Positions 11,687 through 34,219 of a stretch of 64,000 nucleotides of DNA are shown here, piece after piece (the stretch's first letter is position 1; every line of letters begins with the position of its first letter). Location of the stretch: assembly GCA_977020255.1 (NCBI GenBank), contig CDROCS010006454.1, positions 1 to 64,000 of the forward strand, read 5' to 3'. A program made the translations under genes and the position numbers. Origin of the DNA: Obrimoposthia wandeli (taxonomy: Eukaryota). The notes under the pieces are model-generated. The model ran no database searches. It saw nothing but the letters and a program-made list of their open reading frames with translations, and had not been told where the DNA came from.

Positions 11687-13255
11687 TTGACACTATTATT
11701 AAACGATTATATCGCTGCTTTTGCTCAAGAAAAGCATATTACTTCTTTGAGCCAATTTGGTCGCGGTATAGAGCGTGAAACACTTAGGGTGCTGCCACAA
11801 GCTCGACTATCTGAACAACCGCACAGTGAACGCTTAGGCTCAGCATTAACGCATCCCAATATAACAACTGACTATTCAGAGACTTTACTTGAATTTATTA
11901 CACCGGTTAGTTATGCCCCAGAAACGGTTATTGCTCAGCTCGAAGACGTACAGAAATTTACTTTAAGCCAGCTTGACGGTGAACTATTATGGCCGATGAG
12001 CATGCCGTGCTTTGTTGAAGATGATGATAAAATACCGTTAGCACAATACGGTAAATCGAATATCGGTAAGATGAAAACGGTTTATCGCCAAGGTTTAAAA
12101 AATCGTTACGGCAGTATGATGCAGGTTATTTCTGGCATCCATTTCAATTTTTCTTTTCCGAAAGATTTTTGGCAATCAATGCAAACGATTGAACAAAATA
12201 CCGATGCACTTGATGATTATATTTCTGATAAATATTTCGCACTATTAAGAAACTATAAACGCTTTTGTTGGTTAATCCCTTATTTATACGGTAGCTCACC
12301 GGCTATTTGTAGTTCTTTTTTAAAAAATAAAGCGACTGATTTACCTTTTAAAAAATCTGAAAAAGGTTATATGTACCTTGAGTATGCTACGTCATTGCGT
12401 ATGAGCGATTTGGGTTATACCAATAGCGAACAGTCATCGTTGCAAATTTGTTATAACAATTTATCAGGTTATTTAGATGGGGTGAAAAATGCCATTAATT
12501 TACCGTCGAAAAAATTTGAAAAAATTGGTCTTAAAGTAGATGGAAAATATCAGCAACTCAATAGTAATGTACTACAAATAGAAAATGAATTGTACGCACC
12601 GGTTCGTCCAAAATGTGTTGCCCAAGCCGGTGAAAAACCTTCTGAAGCACTAAAAAATCGAGGTGTTGAGTATATTGAAGTTAGAGCGCTCGACGTTAAT
12701 CCTTGGTCAGCAACAGGAATAACCGTTGAGCAAGTTAGATTTTTAGACATTTTTTTAACTTTCTGTATGTTCGAACCGAGTGAGATTCTTAATTGTAGTG
12801 AACAAGCAACTTGTGAAGAAAATATGGATGCTATTGTTGTTCGAGGTCGCGATCCTGCTTTACGATTACATGACAATGCAGAAGAAAAATCGGTTAAGCA
12901 GTGGGGCGGAGAAATTTTTACAAAAATGGCTGATGTTGCTACGTTATTAGATCAAGCTAACGGCAGTGATTTATATCGTGCTGTTTTTGAGACTGAAGCT
13001 GCGAAGATTAATGACGCGAGTTTAACGCCTTCAGCAAAAATTTTAGCATCGGTTGTTGGTGAAAATAAATCATTAATAAAAACGGCACTCGATAGAGCAA
13101 TTGAGTATCGTGAGCAACTTTTAGCTAATGACTATCAAGAGTTTACGGAACAATATTTTGTCGATGCTGCGGCAGAGTCCTTGCAAAAACAAGCAGATAT
13201 TGAAATGAATGATAAGCTTGATTTTGACGCATTTCTAAAAGACTATTTTTCTTAA
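11687..13255 (+). CDS. gshA: Glutamate-cysteine ligase
   Basis: RGIERETLRV, ITTDYSETLLEFITP, WPMSMPC, SGIHFNFS, LQIENELY, GVEYIEVRALD; TTG start. Confidence 0.96.
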   Translation: MTLLLNDYIAAFAQEKHITSLSQFGRGIERETLRVLPQARLSEQPHSERLGSALTHPNITTDYSETLLEFITPVSYAPETVIAQLEDVQKFTLSQLDGELLWPMSMPCFVEDDDKIPLAQYGKSNIGKMKTVYRQGLKNRYGSMMQVISGIHFNFSFPKDFWQSMQTIEQNTDALDDYISDKYFALLRNYKRFCWLIPYLYGSSPAICSSFLKNKATDLPFKKSEKGYMYLEYATSLRMSDLGYTNSEQSSLQICYNNLSGYLDGVKNAINLPSKKFEKIGLKVDGKYQQLNSNVLQIENELYAPVRPKCVAQAGEKPSEALKNRGVEYIEVRALDVNPWSATGITVEQVRFLDIFLTFCMFEPSEILNCSEQATCEENMDAIVVRGRDPALRLHDNAEEKSVKQWGGEIFTKMADVATLLDQANGSDLYRAVFETEAAKINDASLTPSAKILASVVGENKSLIKTALDRAIEYREQLLANDYQEFTEQYFVDAAAESLQKQADIEMNDKLDFDAFLKDYFS

Positions 13256-13410
13256 TCGTTACTGCGCTTAATATTGATGCTAACCTTGGTTTTAATCTTG
13301 AGCTTTAGGTGAGTTTCGAAATATTTATTGGAATTTTCAGTGACACTGTTTTTAGATCACAACTTATCCAGAGTCACTATTTAAGAATTATCATTTATTA
13401 AATTACAGGC

Positions 13411-13439
13411 AAAAAAATAGCGCGTTAATGTAACGCGCT
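13411..13439 (-). terminator. Minus-strand intrinsic terminator with no annotated gene upstream
   Basis: On minus: AGCGCGTTA-CAT-TAACGCGCT-A-TTTTTTT. Confidence 0.75.
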
Positions 13440-13706
13440 GCAAATAATAAGAAAGTAGTCCAGGGAGGTTTACTTTCAAGTTATTCGACTTCGGCTTTTT
13501 TTATTAGTTCATTTTTATTCAAAATAGATCTTTTATTTTTTAGTTCGCCCTAGCTAGCTATAAAATCATAAATCAATGCTGGTTTGTTCAGCTACAATTC
13601 CCTGCTATTACTGGCTACGCTGTTATATTTTATGATATTGCTTTATTGGCTTCCTATCACTCTAAAGTTAATCGTTCATCTTGCTTTAATTCTCTATTTG
13701 TCTTGT

Positions 13707-13781
13707 TTATACCTCTTTAGCTGAGTCGTTAACTATCGATACTTTGTCGTTTGAGAAGCCATTGATGCTCAAACTACTCAT
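13707..13781 (-). CDS. Candidate small protein, 24 aa (MSSLSINGFSNDKVSIVNDSAKEV)
   Basis: ATG..TAA frame read manually; GAGGAG 12 nt upstream; lies upstream of the 13411-13439 terminator. Confidence 0.3.
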   Translation of the reverse strand: MSSLSINGFSNDKVSIVNDSAKEV

Positions 13782-13839
13782 AATATGAAACCACTCCTCT
13801 TTACATTATTTAGCGGTAGCGAATCGAAGAAAATCAGAC

Positions 13840-13930
13840 AAAAAAAAGCACATTTATTAAATAATAAATGTGCAGTAGAACAATGAAGATTATAAACACT
13901 AAAATATAAACACTAAGGAATAACACTCTC
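13840..13930 (-). ncRNA. Candidate sigma-E-dependent small RNA (~90 nt), MicA-positioned
   Basis: GGAACTA-N16-TCATA promoter at 13964-13937, then an ORF-free U/G-rich body, an 11-bp perfect hairpin (13848-13873) and U8. Confidence 0.55.
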
Positions 13931-13936
13931 ATATAG

Positions 13937-13964
13937 TATGAACATCAAAAGTTAAGTTAGTTCC
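13937..13964 (-). promoter_or_regulatory. Putative RpoE (sigma-E) promoter
   Basis: -35 GGAACTA (13964-13958), 16-nt spacer, -10 TCATA (13941-13937), versus consensus GGAACTT-N16-TCAAA/TCTRA. Confidence 0.55.
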
Positions 13965-14112
13965 TCAGCCCAAATAAAATTTTTAATTTATTAAAGATAA
14001 ATGTTGTGAATACACTATTTTTTAGAAAAATTTAATGATGCTTAAGAGAAATAAGTAAAGAAAAAGTCCATTAAATGACGAGTTTAACCTGATAAGTCAC
14101 AAATATTCTGGC

Positions 14113-14772
14113 ATGATAAAAGCAATTCAATTATACGTAACTGTGTGCATGACTTTTATTAAAACATTTATCATTTCAACATTGGCGTGCTTAACATTAT
14201 CAAGTTGTGCGACAAGTCCCCCTAAAAAACCTGAAAACCTATGTGAAATATTCCGTGAACATCGAGATTGGTACTTTGCTGCCAAGGAAATGCGTGAACG
14301 GTGGGGTGTTCCCATTCATGTGCCAATGAGTATGATGTATCAAGAAAGCTCTTTTAAAGCTGATGCTTTGCCCCCTAAAGACTATATTTTAGGCTTTATT
14401 CCTTGGGGCCGTGTTAGTAGTGCCTATGGCTATTCACAGGCTAAAACGATGACATGGGATGATTACATCAGGGAAACGGATAACTCTGGTGCTGACCGTG
14501 ATGACTTTGAAGATGCTATCGACTTTATGGGATGGTTTATTTTTAAAACGCAAAAAATTAACAAAGTCTCAAAATGGGATGCTTATGGCCAATATTTAAA
14601 TTACCACGAAGGCTGGGGTGGTTTTAAACGCAAGAGCTATAAGAAAAAATCTTGGTTAGTGAAGGTTGCTCGAAAAGTCGATAATCGTGCTAAACGTTAT
14701 GGTGGTCAGCTTAAAAGTTGCGAAGAGGAGCTGGATCACGGCTGGTTATGGCGTTTTGTCTTTGAGGATTAG
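14113..14772 (+). CDS. Lipoprotein with a transglycosylase SLT-like domain (ATG at 14149 is the likely start)
   Basis: Lipobox LSSC; MMYQESSF catalytic Glu, SSAYGYSQA, YLNYHEGWGG. Confidence 0.85.
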   Translation: MIKAIQLYVTVCMTFIKTFIISTLACLTLSSCATSPPKKPENLCEIFREHRDWYFAAKEMRERWGVPIHVPMSMMYQESSFKADALPPKDYILGFIPWGRVSSAYGYSQAKTMTWDDYIRETDNSGADRDDFEDAIDFMGWFIFKTQKINKVSKWDAYGQYLNYHEGWGGFKRKSYKKKSWLVKVARKVDNRAKRYGGQLKSCEEELDHGWLWRFVFED

Positions 14773-31286: not shown

Positions 31287-31994
31287 TTAACCGCATTTCG
31301 AATCACCACAGTTTAAACACGTTGAACAGCCATCTAGCAACACTACAGATTTCTGATGGCATTTTTTACAACTACTAGCGCTCGCAGGAAAACTGCTCTG
31401 TTGGTTTTTATTCTCGCTTTCTATCATTGTCACTTTCTTTTTCTGCTGCAAGTAGGCTTGTTGGTGTGCATCTATTTCACTTTTCGGTAGCATATCTAGC
31501 GTTTTTAAATGAGTTTCAATGACATGACCAATATCAGCAACCACTGAGGGCATAAAGATGCCAGTGCCGGGTTGGTAATATCCGCCTTTAGGATCAAAAA
31601 CAGCTTTTAATTCTTCGACTAAAAATGTGCAATCACCACCTTTACGAAATACGGCTGAAATAACACGTGTTAACGCGACAATCCAAGCATAAAATTCCAT
31701 ATTTTTTGAATTAACGAATACTTCAAATGGTCGTCTAACTTCATGTGCCGTGCCTTGATTTAATAAAATATCGTTGACGGTTATATACAGAGCATGGTCT
31801 GAAACCGGTGGTTTTATCTTGTAAGTTGAGCCAATTAACATTTCAGGTCGTTTGGTTTTTTCGGTCAAATTTACTGTCGTGCTCTGGTGAGTATTTTCTT
31901 CACTCTTCTGGTTGTTCTCTTGCTGGTTTTGAGTACTCGTCGCTACTTCTGCTTGTACTTTTGCAGCGGTAATATTTTGTGTTATTTCTTTCAT
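31287..31994 (-). CDS. nrdJb: NrdJb, C-terminal subunit of a split class II ribonucleotide reductase (TSCPD domain plus Zn ribbon)
   Basis: GSTYKIKPP, ALYITVND, RPFEVFVNSK, LKAVFDPKGG, CKKC...DGCSTCLNCGDSKCG. Confidence 0.88.
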   Translation of the reverse strand: MKEITQNITAAKVQAEVATSTQNQQENNQKSEENTHQSTTVNLTEKTKRPEMLIGSTYKIKPPVSDHALYITVNDILLNQGTAHEVRRPFEVFVNSKNMEFYAWIVALTRVISAVFRKGGDCTFLVEELKAVFDPKGGYYQPGTGIFMPSVVADIGHVIETHLKTLDMLPKSEIDAHQQAYLQQKKKVTMIESENKNQQSSFPASASSCKKCHQKSVVLLDGCSTCLNCGDSKCG

Positions 31995-32035: not shown

Positions 32036-34219
32036 CTAAAGTTTGCCGTAATAGCCTTCTTTTAAGGCATCATGTAAGTTGGCCGCGGTATGTATTTCAC
32101 CGTCATAGCGGATTTCTTCATTACCTTTAGCGATGACTTTTGTGCCATCGGCAAGGGTGAATTCATAGCTGACTTTTTCTAAATCAGTTTCTTTCACTAA
32201 TACACCCTGATGTACTTCAGGATTAAAGCGAAAAGTCGTGCAGCCTTTTAGGCCTTTTTCAAAAGCATAGAGATAAATATTTTTGAATTTTTCATAATCA
32301 AAATCAGTAGGGATATTAATGGTTTTTGAAATAGAAGAGTCTATCCAAAACTGTGCTGCGGCTTGAATATCGACATGCTCCTGTGGGCTTATCGTGTCGC
32401 TAACCGCAAAGTAATTGGGCAGTTTATTGTTGCCTTCAGTGGCATAAGCTTGTGCATTAGCATTAACTGTCGCGCGATAGGCTAAAAGCTCATAACTTGA
32501 TACCGCAACAGACTCCTTAGATTTTTTGCCTTCACGAATAATATTACGATGGTATTCATGAGCAAAACTTGGCTCAATACCGTTTGAGACATTATTACCT
32601 AAACTCAGCGCAAGTGTGCCTGTTGGTGCGATAGAGCTATGGTGTGTGAAGCGCGCACCAACTTTAGCAAGTTGCGCAATTAACTCAGGCTCTTCTTCGG
32701 CAATTCTTTGCATATAACGGCTGTATTTTGCATGTAATACGGCGCCTTTAATTTTGTCGCCAACCTTGATGCCGTCTTTTTTCATCTCAGGGCGTTTATT
32801 AAGCATGGCTTGATCAACGACAAATATTTGCTTGAGAATAGGAGCTGGGCCTTTCTCTTTCGCCAAATTTAGCGCTTCTTGCCAGCCGGTAATAGCGAGA
32901 ACTTTTGTTACTTCTTCGGTAAATGCTAACGCTTCTGGACTGTTGTAAGGTATTTTTAGCAAGGTTAGTGCTGAGCCCAAGCCAAGGTAACCCATGCCAT
33001 GTCGACGTTTATTTTCGATCTCTGAGCGTTGCTCTGCCAGTGGTAAGCCGTTTATCTCTACGACGTTATCTAGCATGCGAGTGAAGACACGAATTACTTC
33101 TTTAAACTTATTCCAATCAAATTGGGCATTAGCAGAAAATGGTTGTTCGACAAATTTCACTAAATCGATTGAACCGAGTAAACAAGCACCGTGCGGAGGT
33201 AATATTTGTTCGCCGCAAGGGTTGCTGGCACGCAGTTGCTCGCAAAACCAATTGTTATTGAGTTCATTGGCATGATCGATAAGTATGAAACCAGGCTCGG
33301 CATAATCGAAGGTGTTACTCATGATCATATCCCACAGTCGCTGTGCTGGAATATGTTGATAAATCTTACAGGCAATTTCTCCTTGCTCATTGAGGATGTA
33401 GCCGTGGTTGTTAATAAAGTCGGCGTGATAATGGTTGGCTTTAAAAAGTACGATGGAATCATCACTAAGATCGATATTATCAGCCTGTACTTCTTTATGT
33501 GTTAAGGGAAAGTTTAATGGCCAATCTGCATTATTTTTTACTGCCGTGATAAAGCTATCGCTGATCAGTAAAGATAAATTAAATTGTCGTAAACGACCAT
33601 TTTCACGTTTGGCGAGAATAAAATCTTTTACATCAGGGTGAGAAATATCAAACACCCCCATTTGGGCACCGCGACGACCACCGGCAGAGCTAACGGTAAA
33701 ACACATTTTATCGTAAATATCCATAAACGATAGTGGTCCTGAAGTTGTTGCTCCTGCACCTGCAACATAAGCACCGCTTGGCCTTAATGTCGAAAATTCG
33801 TAACCTATGCCACAACCGGCTTTAAGCGTTAAGCCCGCTTGATGTACTTGCTGTAAAATTCCAGTCATTGAATCTTCAATCGTGCCAGATACTGTGCAAT
33901 TTATGGTTGAGGTCGCGGGTTTAAACTTTTCTGCTCCGGCATTAGAAATAATACGCCCTGCGGGATAAGCACCAGACTCCATCGCCCAAAGAAATTTTTG
34001 CTGCCATTTTGCTTGTTCGCTAGTTTCGATATCAGCTAGTGCTGTGGCAACTCGAATAAAGGTTTCGTGTACTGAAGACTCTTGATTGTTACCGTGTTTA
34101 TCTTTGAGACGATATTTTTTGTCCCAAATGTCATGTGATGCGGCCTGCAATGGCAATGAGGTGCTTTTTTGCCGTATATTAACGTTGGTCAACGTTGTTT
34201 TTATTTTAGCTAGATTCAT
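32036..34219 (-). CDS. nrdJa: Adenosylcobalamin-dependent ribonucleotide reductase NrdJa
   Basis: PAGRI, TINC, AGGRRGAQM, SNPCGEQ, SIAPTGT, WIDSSISKTIN, LKGCTTFR. Confidence 0.92.
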   Translation of the reverse strand: MNLAKIKTTLTNVNIRQKSTSLPLQAASHDIWDKKYRLKDKHGNNQESSVHETFIRVATALADIETSEQAKWQQKFLWAMESGAYPAGRIISNAGAEKFKPATSTINCTVSGTIEDSMTGILQQVHQAGLTLKAGCGIGYEFSTLRPSGAYVAGAGATTSGPLSFMDIYDKMCFTVSSAGGRRGAQMGVFDISHPDVKDFILAKRENGRLRQFNLSLLISDSFITAVKNNADWPLNFPLTHKEVQADNIDLSDDSIVLFKANHYHADFINNHGYILNEQGEIACKIYQHIPAQRLWDMIMSNTFDYAEPGFILIDHANELNNNWFCEQLRASNPCGEQILPPHGACLLGSIDLVKFVEQPFSANAQFDWNKFKEVIRVFTRMLDNVVEINGLPLAEQRSEIENKRRHGMGYLGLGSALTLLKIPYNSPEALAFTEEVTKVLAITGWQEALNLAKEKGPAPILKQIFVVDQAMLNKRPEMKKDGIKVGDKIKGAVLHAKYSRYMQRIAEEEPELIAQLAKVGARFTHHSSIAPTGTLALSLGNNVSNGIEPSFAHEYHRNIIREGKKSKESVAVSSYELLAYRATVNANAQAYATEGNNKLPNYFAVSDTISPQEHVDIQAAAQFWIDSSISKTINIPTDFDYEKFKNIYLYAFEKGLKGCTTFRFNPEVHQGVLVKETDLEKVSYEFTLADGTKVIAKGNEEIRYDGEIHTAANLHDALKEGYYGKL

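What the first reader, a model, noticed from the sequence alone, without database searches (positions are those of the whole stretch)
13840..13964. Unannotated sigma-E-type sRNA at the MicA position next to gshA
Seen: on the minus strand a GGAACTA-N16-TCATA promoter, then about 90 nt without an ORF, containing a duplicated UUAGUGUUUAUA seed-like tract (13894-13920 region), ending in a perfect 11-bp hairpin and U8. Established: in enterobacteria the RpoE-dependent, Hfq-binding sRNA MicA lies just downstream of gshA on the opposite strand and represses porins; Vibrio use unrelated RpoE sRNAs (VrrA, MicV). Inference: a Colwelliaceae envelope-stress sRNA with no obvious sequence similarity to MicA.
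Basis: partly seen in the sequence, partly recalled or inferred. Interest (0 to 1): 0.7.

Follow-up and report, generated by a model that had tools for sequence, protein, structure and literature searches.

The report
Sigma-E-type small RNA beside gshA
A short non-coding RNA gene carrying the promoter type read by the bacterial envelope-stress sigma factor lies between gshA and a cell-wall enzyme gene. It belongs to a conserved, often tandemly multiplied RNA family of the marine Colwelliaceae for which I found no entry in Rfam or in the searched literature.

Summary
On the minus strand there is GGAACTA-N16-TCATA, a predicted start at 13930, a 12-nt tract repeated twice, an 11-12 bp hairpin and U8. 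The one error is a 32-codon ORF that spans the unit, but that ORF is not conserved.

Comparison with 50 gshA loci and 11 metagenome contigs shows a real gene. 80 promoter-plus-terminator units lie on the same strand between gshA and an SLT transglycosylase gene across Colwelliaceae. All have exactly the N16 spacing. The -35, the -10 and the 5' part of the RNA are conserved, the spacers are not, and the terminator stem covaries.

The units form two paralogous families:
- Family A is single-copy and lies next to gshA.
- Family B has 0-7 copies. The finding is the window's only B copy and the longest B unit found (91 nt), because of a 14-nt internal duplication seen in no other copy.

The promoter layout equals that of E. 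coli micA and rybB. No similarity to MicA, RybB or any Rfam family was detected.

It is most likely a sigma-E-driven, Hfq-type trans-acting regulator. Sigma-E dependence and the targets remain inferred. Family A, not the finding, occupies the MicA-like position.

The parts
13958..13964 (-). -35 element GGAACTA of the family B unit
   Evidence: GAACT is invariant in all 80 clean units.
13937..13941 (-). -10 element TCATA, exactly 16 nt after the -35 heptamer
   Evidence: The N16 spacing is invariant in 80 of 80 units. The layout matches E. coli micA and rybB.
13840..13930 (-). Predicted family B small RNA, about 91 nt. The start at G13930 is inferred, 7 nt after the -10 element.
   Evidence: BLAST match to L038 at E=4e-16. 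Longest of 51 B units, median 69 nt.
13908..13924 (-). Conserved 5' core (GUUAUUCCUUAGUGUUU), the presumed seed
   Evidence: The most conserved block of family B in alignments A1 and A4. This region is unstructured in the centroid fold.
13891..13916 (-). Two 12-nt direct repeats (13916-13905 and 13902-13891), period 14, duplicating the 3' part of the core
   Evidence: The duplication is absent from every other B copy, including 11 metagenome copies of the same lineage.
13848..13873 (-). Terminator hairpin
   Evidence: Identical to the hairpin of L038. The stem covaries across the family.
13840..13847 (-). U8 tail
13484..13510 (-). Promoter of the neighbouring family A unit (GAACTA-N16-TCGAA)
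13411..13477 (-). Family A small RNA, 67 nt: a 5' stem enclosing a C-rich loop, a U-rich linker, terminator 13439-13419 and a U tail
   Evidence: z = -5.75. Scores 85.7 bits with model R2.
11687..13255 (+). gshA, convergent with both RNA genes
   Evidence: Pfam Glu_cys_ligase, E=3e-164.
14113..14772 (+). SLT_4 transglycosylase gene, divergent from the B promoter. It is the conserved far border of the cluster.

Best explanation
Window 13964-13840 (minus strand) is a functional gene for a small non-coding RNA of about 91 nt. It is transcribed from an RpoE (sigma-E, ECF02-type) promoter and ended by an intrinsic terminator.

It is the window's single copy of a Colwelliaceae RNA family, called B here. 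Family B has a paralogue, family A, and both are confined to the gshA-SLT spacer.

Inferred mechanism: envelope stress releases sigma-E, which fires the promoter. The RNA binds Hfq through its U-rich stretch, terminator and U tail. Its unstructured, conserved, C-containing 5' core pairs with ribosome-binding regions of mRNAs, most plausibly for outer-membrane or envelope proteins, and lowers their translation. The window copy carries a lineage-specific 14-nt duplication of part of that core.

Shown here: the anatomy, the conservation, the paralogy and the absence of a coding signal. Inferred: the sigma factor, the exact start, Hfq binding, the targets and the direction of regulation.
For: - 80 clean promoter-plus-terminator units lie downstream of gshA in the window and 34 Colwelliaceae loci. 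All have exactly N16 spacing, and 79 of 80 have a purine at the predicted start.
- Information content peaks at GAACT and (G/C)TC(A/T)TA and is zero in the spacer.
- The motif is about 300-fold enriched on that strand of the spacer compared with the rest of the loci: 69 hits in 26.8 kb against 5 in 595 kb of strand.
- The layout equals E. coli micA (GAACTC-N16-TCTGA-N6-G) and rybB (GAACTT-N16-TCTTA-N6-G), read from NC_000913.3.
- Terminator stem: 7 of 7 pairs show compensatory changes, 99% of cells are paired, and 0 of 500 shuffles reach this.
- The sequence between the units has no detectable homology in relatives, whereas the units do.
- A 20-base pattern taken from the 5' core found 11 metagenome contigs. 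Every one carries the full promoter and terminator; gshA and/or SLT was found on 10 of the 11, both on 8.
- Models of A and B hit each other over their full length (E about 1e-6 to 1e-2). Alignment of A against B gives z=5.3.
- The 5' 57 nt are unstructured in the centroid fold.
Against: - No expression data, and no rpoE promoter or known sigma-E regulon gene from this clade could be examined. The sigma factor is assigned from the motif only.
- No outer-membrane protein gene lies in the window, so target pairing is untested.
- The window copy is atypical. It has CC where its closest relatives have CCC or CCCC, it carries an insertion, and model R1 matches only its 3' half (20.5 bits, E=0.075). 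It could be a drifting copy.
- Eight of the closest genomes lack family B altogether, so B is dispensable.
- The covariation count was made on an alignment fitted to the model's structure, which leans toward that structure.
Confidence: 0.7

Rival explanations
1. The cluster, through its gshA-proximal member, is the true positional orthologue of enterobacterial MicA, diverged beyond recognition. The finding would then be a duplicated MicA sibling.
For: It has the same geometry as E. coli: convergent with the 3' end of gshA, the same promoter layout, a similar length and the same first five bases GAAAG in family A.
Against: - The Rfam MicA model gives no hit at E<=10 in the window spacer or E<=1 in 7 loci.
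- Model R2 does not hit the E. coli micA locus at E<=5.
- Alignment z is about 0.
- Vibrio (gshA-luxS) and Rheinheimera (gshA-SLT) have no such unit at this site.
- MicA is reported only in Enterobacteriaceae (PMC4618604).
Confidence: 0.2
2. The unit encodes a 32-residue hydrophobic peptide, such as a type I toxin or small membrane protein (ORF 13932-13834).
For: An ATG ORF spans the unit and its product is strongly hydrophobic.
Against: - Across 51 B copies the start codon, reading frame and length all vary (0-44 codons), and some copies have no ORF.
- The ATG lies 2 nt upstream of the predicted transcription start and has no Shine-Dalgarno sequence.
- The stop codon lies beyond the U8 terminator, so a terminated RNA would lack it.
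- T-rich DNA yields hydrophobic codons by composition alone.
Confidence: 0.04
3. The window copy is a decaying or neutral paralogue. It is transcribed or not, but no longer a working regulator, and family A does the work.
For: - Family B is absent from 8 of the nearest genomes.
- The window copy has lost C residues from the core and carries a unique duplication plus extra bases.
- Its match to model R1 is weak and partial.
Against: - Promoter elements, the upstream A/T-rich tract and the terminator are intact. The terminator is identical to that of L038 although the flanks have diverged beyond BLAST detection.
- CC variants of the core also occur in the multi-copy arrays of L041.
Confidence: 0.15
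4. The promoter is read by a different ECF sigma factor or by sigma-70, so the RNA is not part of the envelope-stress response.
For: GAAC at -35 is common to many ECF groups. The sigma-70 scan also reports a weak site inside the unit, with 9 of 12 positions matched.
Against: The full layout (GAACT, N16, TCnnA, N6, purine) matches two experimentally established E. coli sigma-E sRNA promoters base for base in form. It is invariant in 80 units. Sigma-70-like sites in the spacer are not above chance: 3 found against 5.2 expected.
Confidence: 0.1

Closest known systems
MicA (Rfam RF00078), the sigma-E-dependent Hfq-binding sRNA of Enterobacteriaceae
   Same: It has a sigma-E-type promoter with identical spacing, is convergent with the 3' end of gshA, has a similar size and ends in an intrinsic terminator with a U tail. 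Repeat variation inside the mRNA-binding region is also reported for MicA (PMC4618604).
   Different: No sequence or structure similarity was detected. The far neighbour is an SLT gene, not luxS. The finding is the second gene from gshA, not the first. Copy number is variable.
RybB (E. coli), and MicV and VrrA (Vibrio): sigma-E sRNAs that share the seed CRCUGCUUUU
   Same: The rybB -10 element, TCTTA, is the consensus of family B. Like RybB, family B has a 5'-terminal single-stranded conserved region followed directly by a U-rich stretch and the terminator.
   Different: Family B lacks the shared seed. Family A contains ACUGCUUU, but there it forms one arm of a stem, and in the window copy it is changed with a compensating change on the other arm. 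The genomic sites also differ: MicV lies at vc2640/vc2641.
Sibling sRNA sets such as Qrr1-5, OmrA/B, PrrF1/2 and LhrC1-5 (from my own knowledge, not tested here)
   Same: Tandem or multi-copy paralogues share a seed and a promoter type. Relatives carry up to 7 family B copies in a row.
   Different: The regulator and seed differ. I know of no sigma-E-type sRNA described as a tandem array.

Membership tests
MicA (RF00078) | Match to the family covariance model, or significant sequence similarity | tested here: not met
   No hit at E<=10 in window 13000-14400, none at E<=1 in 7 loci, and none at the gathering score in the whole window. Alignment z is -0.7 to 0.2.
MicA (RF00078) | Location on the strand opposite gshA, at its 3' end | tested here: met
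   This holds for the cluster as a whole. Family A ends 156 nt from the gshA stop, while the finding ends 585 nt from it with family A in between.
MicA (RF00078) | Pairing with ompA and other omp mRNAs, and Hfq dependence | not testable with these tools
   No omp gene lies in the window. The rest of the genome is not available.
Sigma-E-dependent trans-acting sRNA (functional class) | Promoter GGAACTT-N16-TCnnA with the start 6-7 nt downstream | tested here: met
   Compared directly with E. coli micA and rybB. This is a motif-level test only.
Sigma-E-dependent trans-acting sRNA (functional class) | RpoE-dependent expression | not testable with these tools
   No transcript data are available, and no rpoE locus of this clade could be fetched.
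Sigma-E-dependent trans-acting sRNA (functional class) | Intrinsic terminator with a long U tail preceded by a U-rich stretch (the Hfq-binding module) | tested here: met
   Stem covariation.
Sigma-E-dependent trans-acting sRNA (functional class) | The shared seed CRCUGCUUUU of RybB, MicV and VrrA | tested here: not met
   The seed is absent from family B. The seed is defined in PMC6694218.
Colwelliaceae gshA-linked family B (defined here) | GAGAG start, U/C-rich core ending in UAGUGUUU, terminator, and a place between gshA and SLT on the strand opposite gshA | tested here: met
   BLAST match to L038 at E=4e-16. Alignment A1. Synteny. Model R1 matches only the 3' half because of the insertion.
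Small protein or type I toxin gene | An ORF conserved in frame, start and length | tested here: not met

The most novel reading that the evidence does not exclude
The 3' flank of gshA may be an ancient, fixed landing site for sigma-E-driven small RNAs. On this reading MicA of enterobacteria and the A/B cluster of Colwelliaceae descend from one ancestral gene. Its sequence turned over completely while its promoter, orientation and position were kept, and in Colwelliaceae it expanded into sibling arrays. The window's duplicated core would be a snapshot of seed evolution by slippage.
Probability: 0.2. Interest if true: 0.65.

Novelty: new member of a known kind. Interest (0 to 1): 0.5.

Why it matters
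Sigma-E-controlled small RNAs are a central arm of the Gram-negative envelope-stress response. They are known in detail only from enterobacteria (MicA, RybB, MicL) and Vibrio (VrrA, MicV).

This locus gives two new candidate families in a cold-marine lineage, with a clear comparative signature and up to eight units side by side. That offers a natural series for studying how sRNA genes duplicate, change their seeds and are lost.

The coincidence with the MicA position raises a testable question: is the 3' flank of gshA a conserved or a recurrent home for such genes? It is not a new kind of mechanism.

Tried and rejected
- Rfam: three scans gave nothing for either family. These were the window spacer at E<=10, seven loci at E<=1, and the whole window at the gathering score. 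The one weak suhB/mmgR hit (E=0.73) lies on family A and rests on its terminator.
- RNAalifold on a plain MAFFT alignment of family B found no pairs, because hairpin lengths differ. The model-based alignment was used instead.
- An exact-protein look-up of the SLT product, meant to find strains of the same species, found nothing on record.
- Target search. RNAduplex against 49 start regions of the window gave only long, bulged AU-rich duplexes of no discriminating value. A search for perfect 10-nt complementarity in the neighbouring genes of every locus gave no recurrent site.
- Literature searches for Colwellia, Alteromonadales or sigma-E sRNAs found no prior description.
- I did not use the large protein searches. 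No protein question was open, and the operators had asked for restraint.
The N-bearing unit L028:6146-6227 is excluded from all the unit tallies (80 clean units). It is still one of the 95 rows of the alignment on which the covariation count was made; there its N cells are set aside. Nothing was looked up to fill those positions.

Full report
**What is in the sequence.** gshA occupies 11687-13255 on the plus strand (Pfam Glu_cys_ligase). The next gene, 14113-14772 on the plus strand, is an SLT_4 lytic transglycosylase. The 857-nt spacer between them has 30% G+C, against 39% for the whole window.

- GGAACTA at 13964-13958, 16 nt of spacer, then TCATA at 13941-13937.
- Six bases further on, G13930.
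- A 12-nt tract present twice, at 13916-13905 and 13902-13891.
- A hairpin at 13873-13848 and eight T at 13847-13840.

The remark that there is no ORF is wrong in the letter, because a 32-codon ATG ORF runs from 13932 to 13834. The promoter motif on its own is within chance, with 0.68 matches expected per window.

Closer to gshA on the same strand lies GAACTA-N16-TCGAA (13510-13484). It is followed by a 67-nt RNA (13477-13411) with its own terminator (13439-13419) and U tail. Of the three matches to the looser motif in 64 kb, two lie in this one spacer.

**Comparative evidence.** The search for related loci with GshA returned 50 loci, mostly Colwellia, Cognaticolwellia, Thalassotalea and Pseudocolwellia. 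The best shares 85% identity, so the window's own species is not among them.
- Scripts found 80 clean units of promoter plus terminator on the minus strand downstream of gshA, in the window and 34 loci.
79 of 80 have a purine at the predicted start.
- Information content is maximal at GAACT and (G/C)TC(A/T)TA and nil in the spacer, with an A/T-rich tract upstream.
- The motif is about 300 times denser on that strand of the gshA-SLT spacer than in the remaining 595 kb of strand.
- Stretches between the units have no BLAST-detectable homology in relatives, while the units do.

**Two families.**
- Family A is about 65-68 nt, longer in Colwellia proper. It is single-copy and proximal to gshA. It starts with GAAAGC, which pairs with GCUUUC to close a loop holding CCUCCCUGG, and continues with a U-rich linker and a strongly conserved terminator. 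The window copy keeps the stem through a change on both arms (GAAAGU with ACUUUC).
- Family B has a median length of 69 nt and 0-7 copies per locus. It starts with GAGAG or AGUAA and carries a conserved, unstructured core (consensus UUCCCUUAGUGUUUCAUG). It ends in terminators whose sequences differ between lineages.

A covariance model of family B (R1) recovered 95 matches. On that alignment all 7 stem pairs show compensatory changes, 99% of cells are paired, and 0 of 500 shuffles reach this. The caveat is that the alignment was fitted to the model.

R1 also finds A copies, and the A model (R2) finds B copies, both over their full length. Direct alignment of A against B gives z=5.3. The two families are therefore paralogues. 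Neither model finds further copies in the 64-kb window.

**The window copy.** It is the longest B unit, at 91 nt. Its terminator is identical to that of L038 and its promoter is intact. Its core reads UUCCUUAG where its closest relatives have three or four C, and it contains the 14-nt-period duplication plus about 7 extra bases. A metagenome scan with a 20-base pattern from the core gave 11 contigs. All are true units with promoter and terminator; gshA and/or SLT was found on 10 of the 11. None has the duplication. Family A accompanies 9 of them.

**Distribution.**
- Within the clade nearest to the window, family A is always present, but family B is missing from 8 genomes.
- Thalassotalea piscium (L022) has seven B-type units and one A unit within about 1.1 kb. 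Colwellia sp. RSH04 (L041) and C. asteriadis (L044) have five or more.
- Rheinheimera keeps gshA next to SLT, with about 180 nt between them and no unit. A Vibrio locus has gshA followed by luxS and no unit.

**Coding test.** Across the B copies the longest sense ORF varies in start codon, frame and length (0-44 codons), and some copies have none. In the window the ATG lies upstream of the predicted start, and the stop lies beyond the terminator. I reject a peptide gene.

**Comparison with known RNAs.** From NC_000913.3, micA reads GAACTC-N16-TCTGA-N6-GAAAG and ends 9 nt from the gshA stop on the opposite strand. rybB reads GAACTT-N16-TCTTA-N6-G. The promoter architecture is thus the same, and TCTTA is the family B consensus.

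In sequence and structure there is nothing in common. There are no Rfam hits, R2 does not hit the micA locus, and alignment z-scores are about 0 for MicA and at most 1.7 for RybB. The seed CRCUGCUUUU shared by RybB, MicV and VrrA (PMC6694218) is absent from family B. Family A has ACUGCUUU, but as a stem arm. MicA is described only in Enterobacteriaceae (PMC4618604), and MicV lies elsewhere in the Vibrio genome.

**Mechanism.**
- Shown: a conserved stand-alone unit with an ECF02-type promoter layout, a conserved single-stranded 5' core, a U-rich stretch, a covarying terminator, no downstream gene to lead into, and no coding signal.
- Inferred: sigma-E fires it under envelope stress, Hfq binds the 3' module, and the C-containing core pairs with ribosome-binding regions of envelope-protein mRNAs and represses them. 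This is how the five known sigma-E sRNAs act.
- Targets could not be examined, because the window has no omp or rpoE genes and the local pairing scans were uninformative.

**Verdict.** This is a real and, as far as Rfam and the searched literature show, undescribed sRNA family. It is a new member of a known kind. Confidence that it is a genuine sigma-E-type sRNA gene is high. Confidence in the envelope-stress repressor role is moderate.

Noticed in passing
window 13411-13510 (minus strand): A second sigma-E-type sRNA unit (family A) lies between the finding and gshA. It has a 5' stem closing a C-rich loop, is conserved in 28 loci besides the window, and shows a compensatory change in the window copy.
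   Followed up: yes
L022:5604-6677; L041:6836-8607; L044:5724-6472: Tandem arrays of 5-8 promoter-RNA-terminator units lie downstream of gshA in Thalassotalea piscium, Colwellia sp. RSH04 and Colwellia asteriadis.
   Followed up: partly
L016:6104-6174; L022:6581-6644; L023:6173-6243; L025:5971-6035; L034:6202-6272; L036:5913-5982: A third variant starts with AAGACAU and places the UUUCCCUUG motif later in the RNA. It is always the unit farthest from gshA in Thalassotalea-type loci.
   Followed up: no
L039 and L040 (Rheinheimera); L042:5576-5680 (Vibrio): Rheinheimera has gshA next to the SLT gene with about 180 nt between them and no sRNA unit. Vibrio has gshA followed by luxS with about 100 nt between them and no unit. 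The cluster therefore looks specific to Colwelliaceae.
   Followed up: partly
L037:5624-5689 and L037:6715-6783 (plus strand): In Colwelliaceae bacterium BS250 the units lie on the same strand as gshA, the reverse of every other locus.
   Followed up: no
window 31287-31994 and 32036-34219 (minus strand): A B12-dependent ribonucleotide reductase is encoded in two consecutive ORFs. The N-terminal 727 residues and a 235-residue C-terminal piece match one NCBIfam model end to end.
   Followed up: no
L057:1-70 (contig end): The metagenome contig switches to adapter-like sequence partway through the terminator of its family B unit, which is probably untrimmed library adapter.
   Followed up: no
L016:183-266: A weak MicF-like Rfam match (40.7 bits, gathering score 79, E=0.02) lies upstream of gshA in Thalassotalea castellviae.
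   Followed up: no
window 1-64000: No Rfam family reaches its gathering score anywhere in the 64-kb window.
   Followed up: yes
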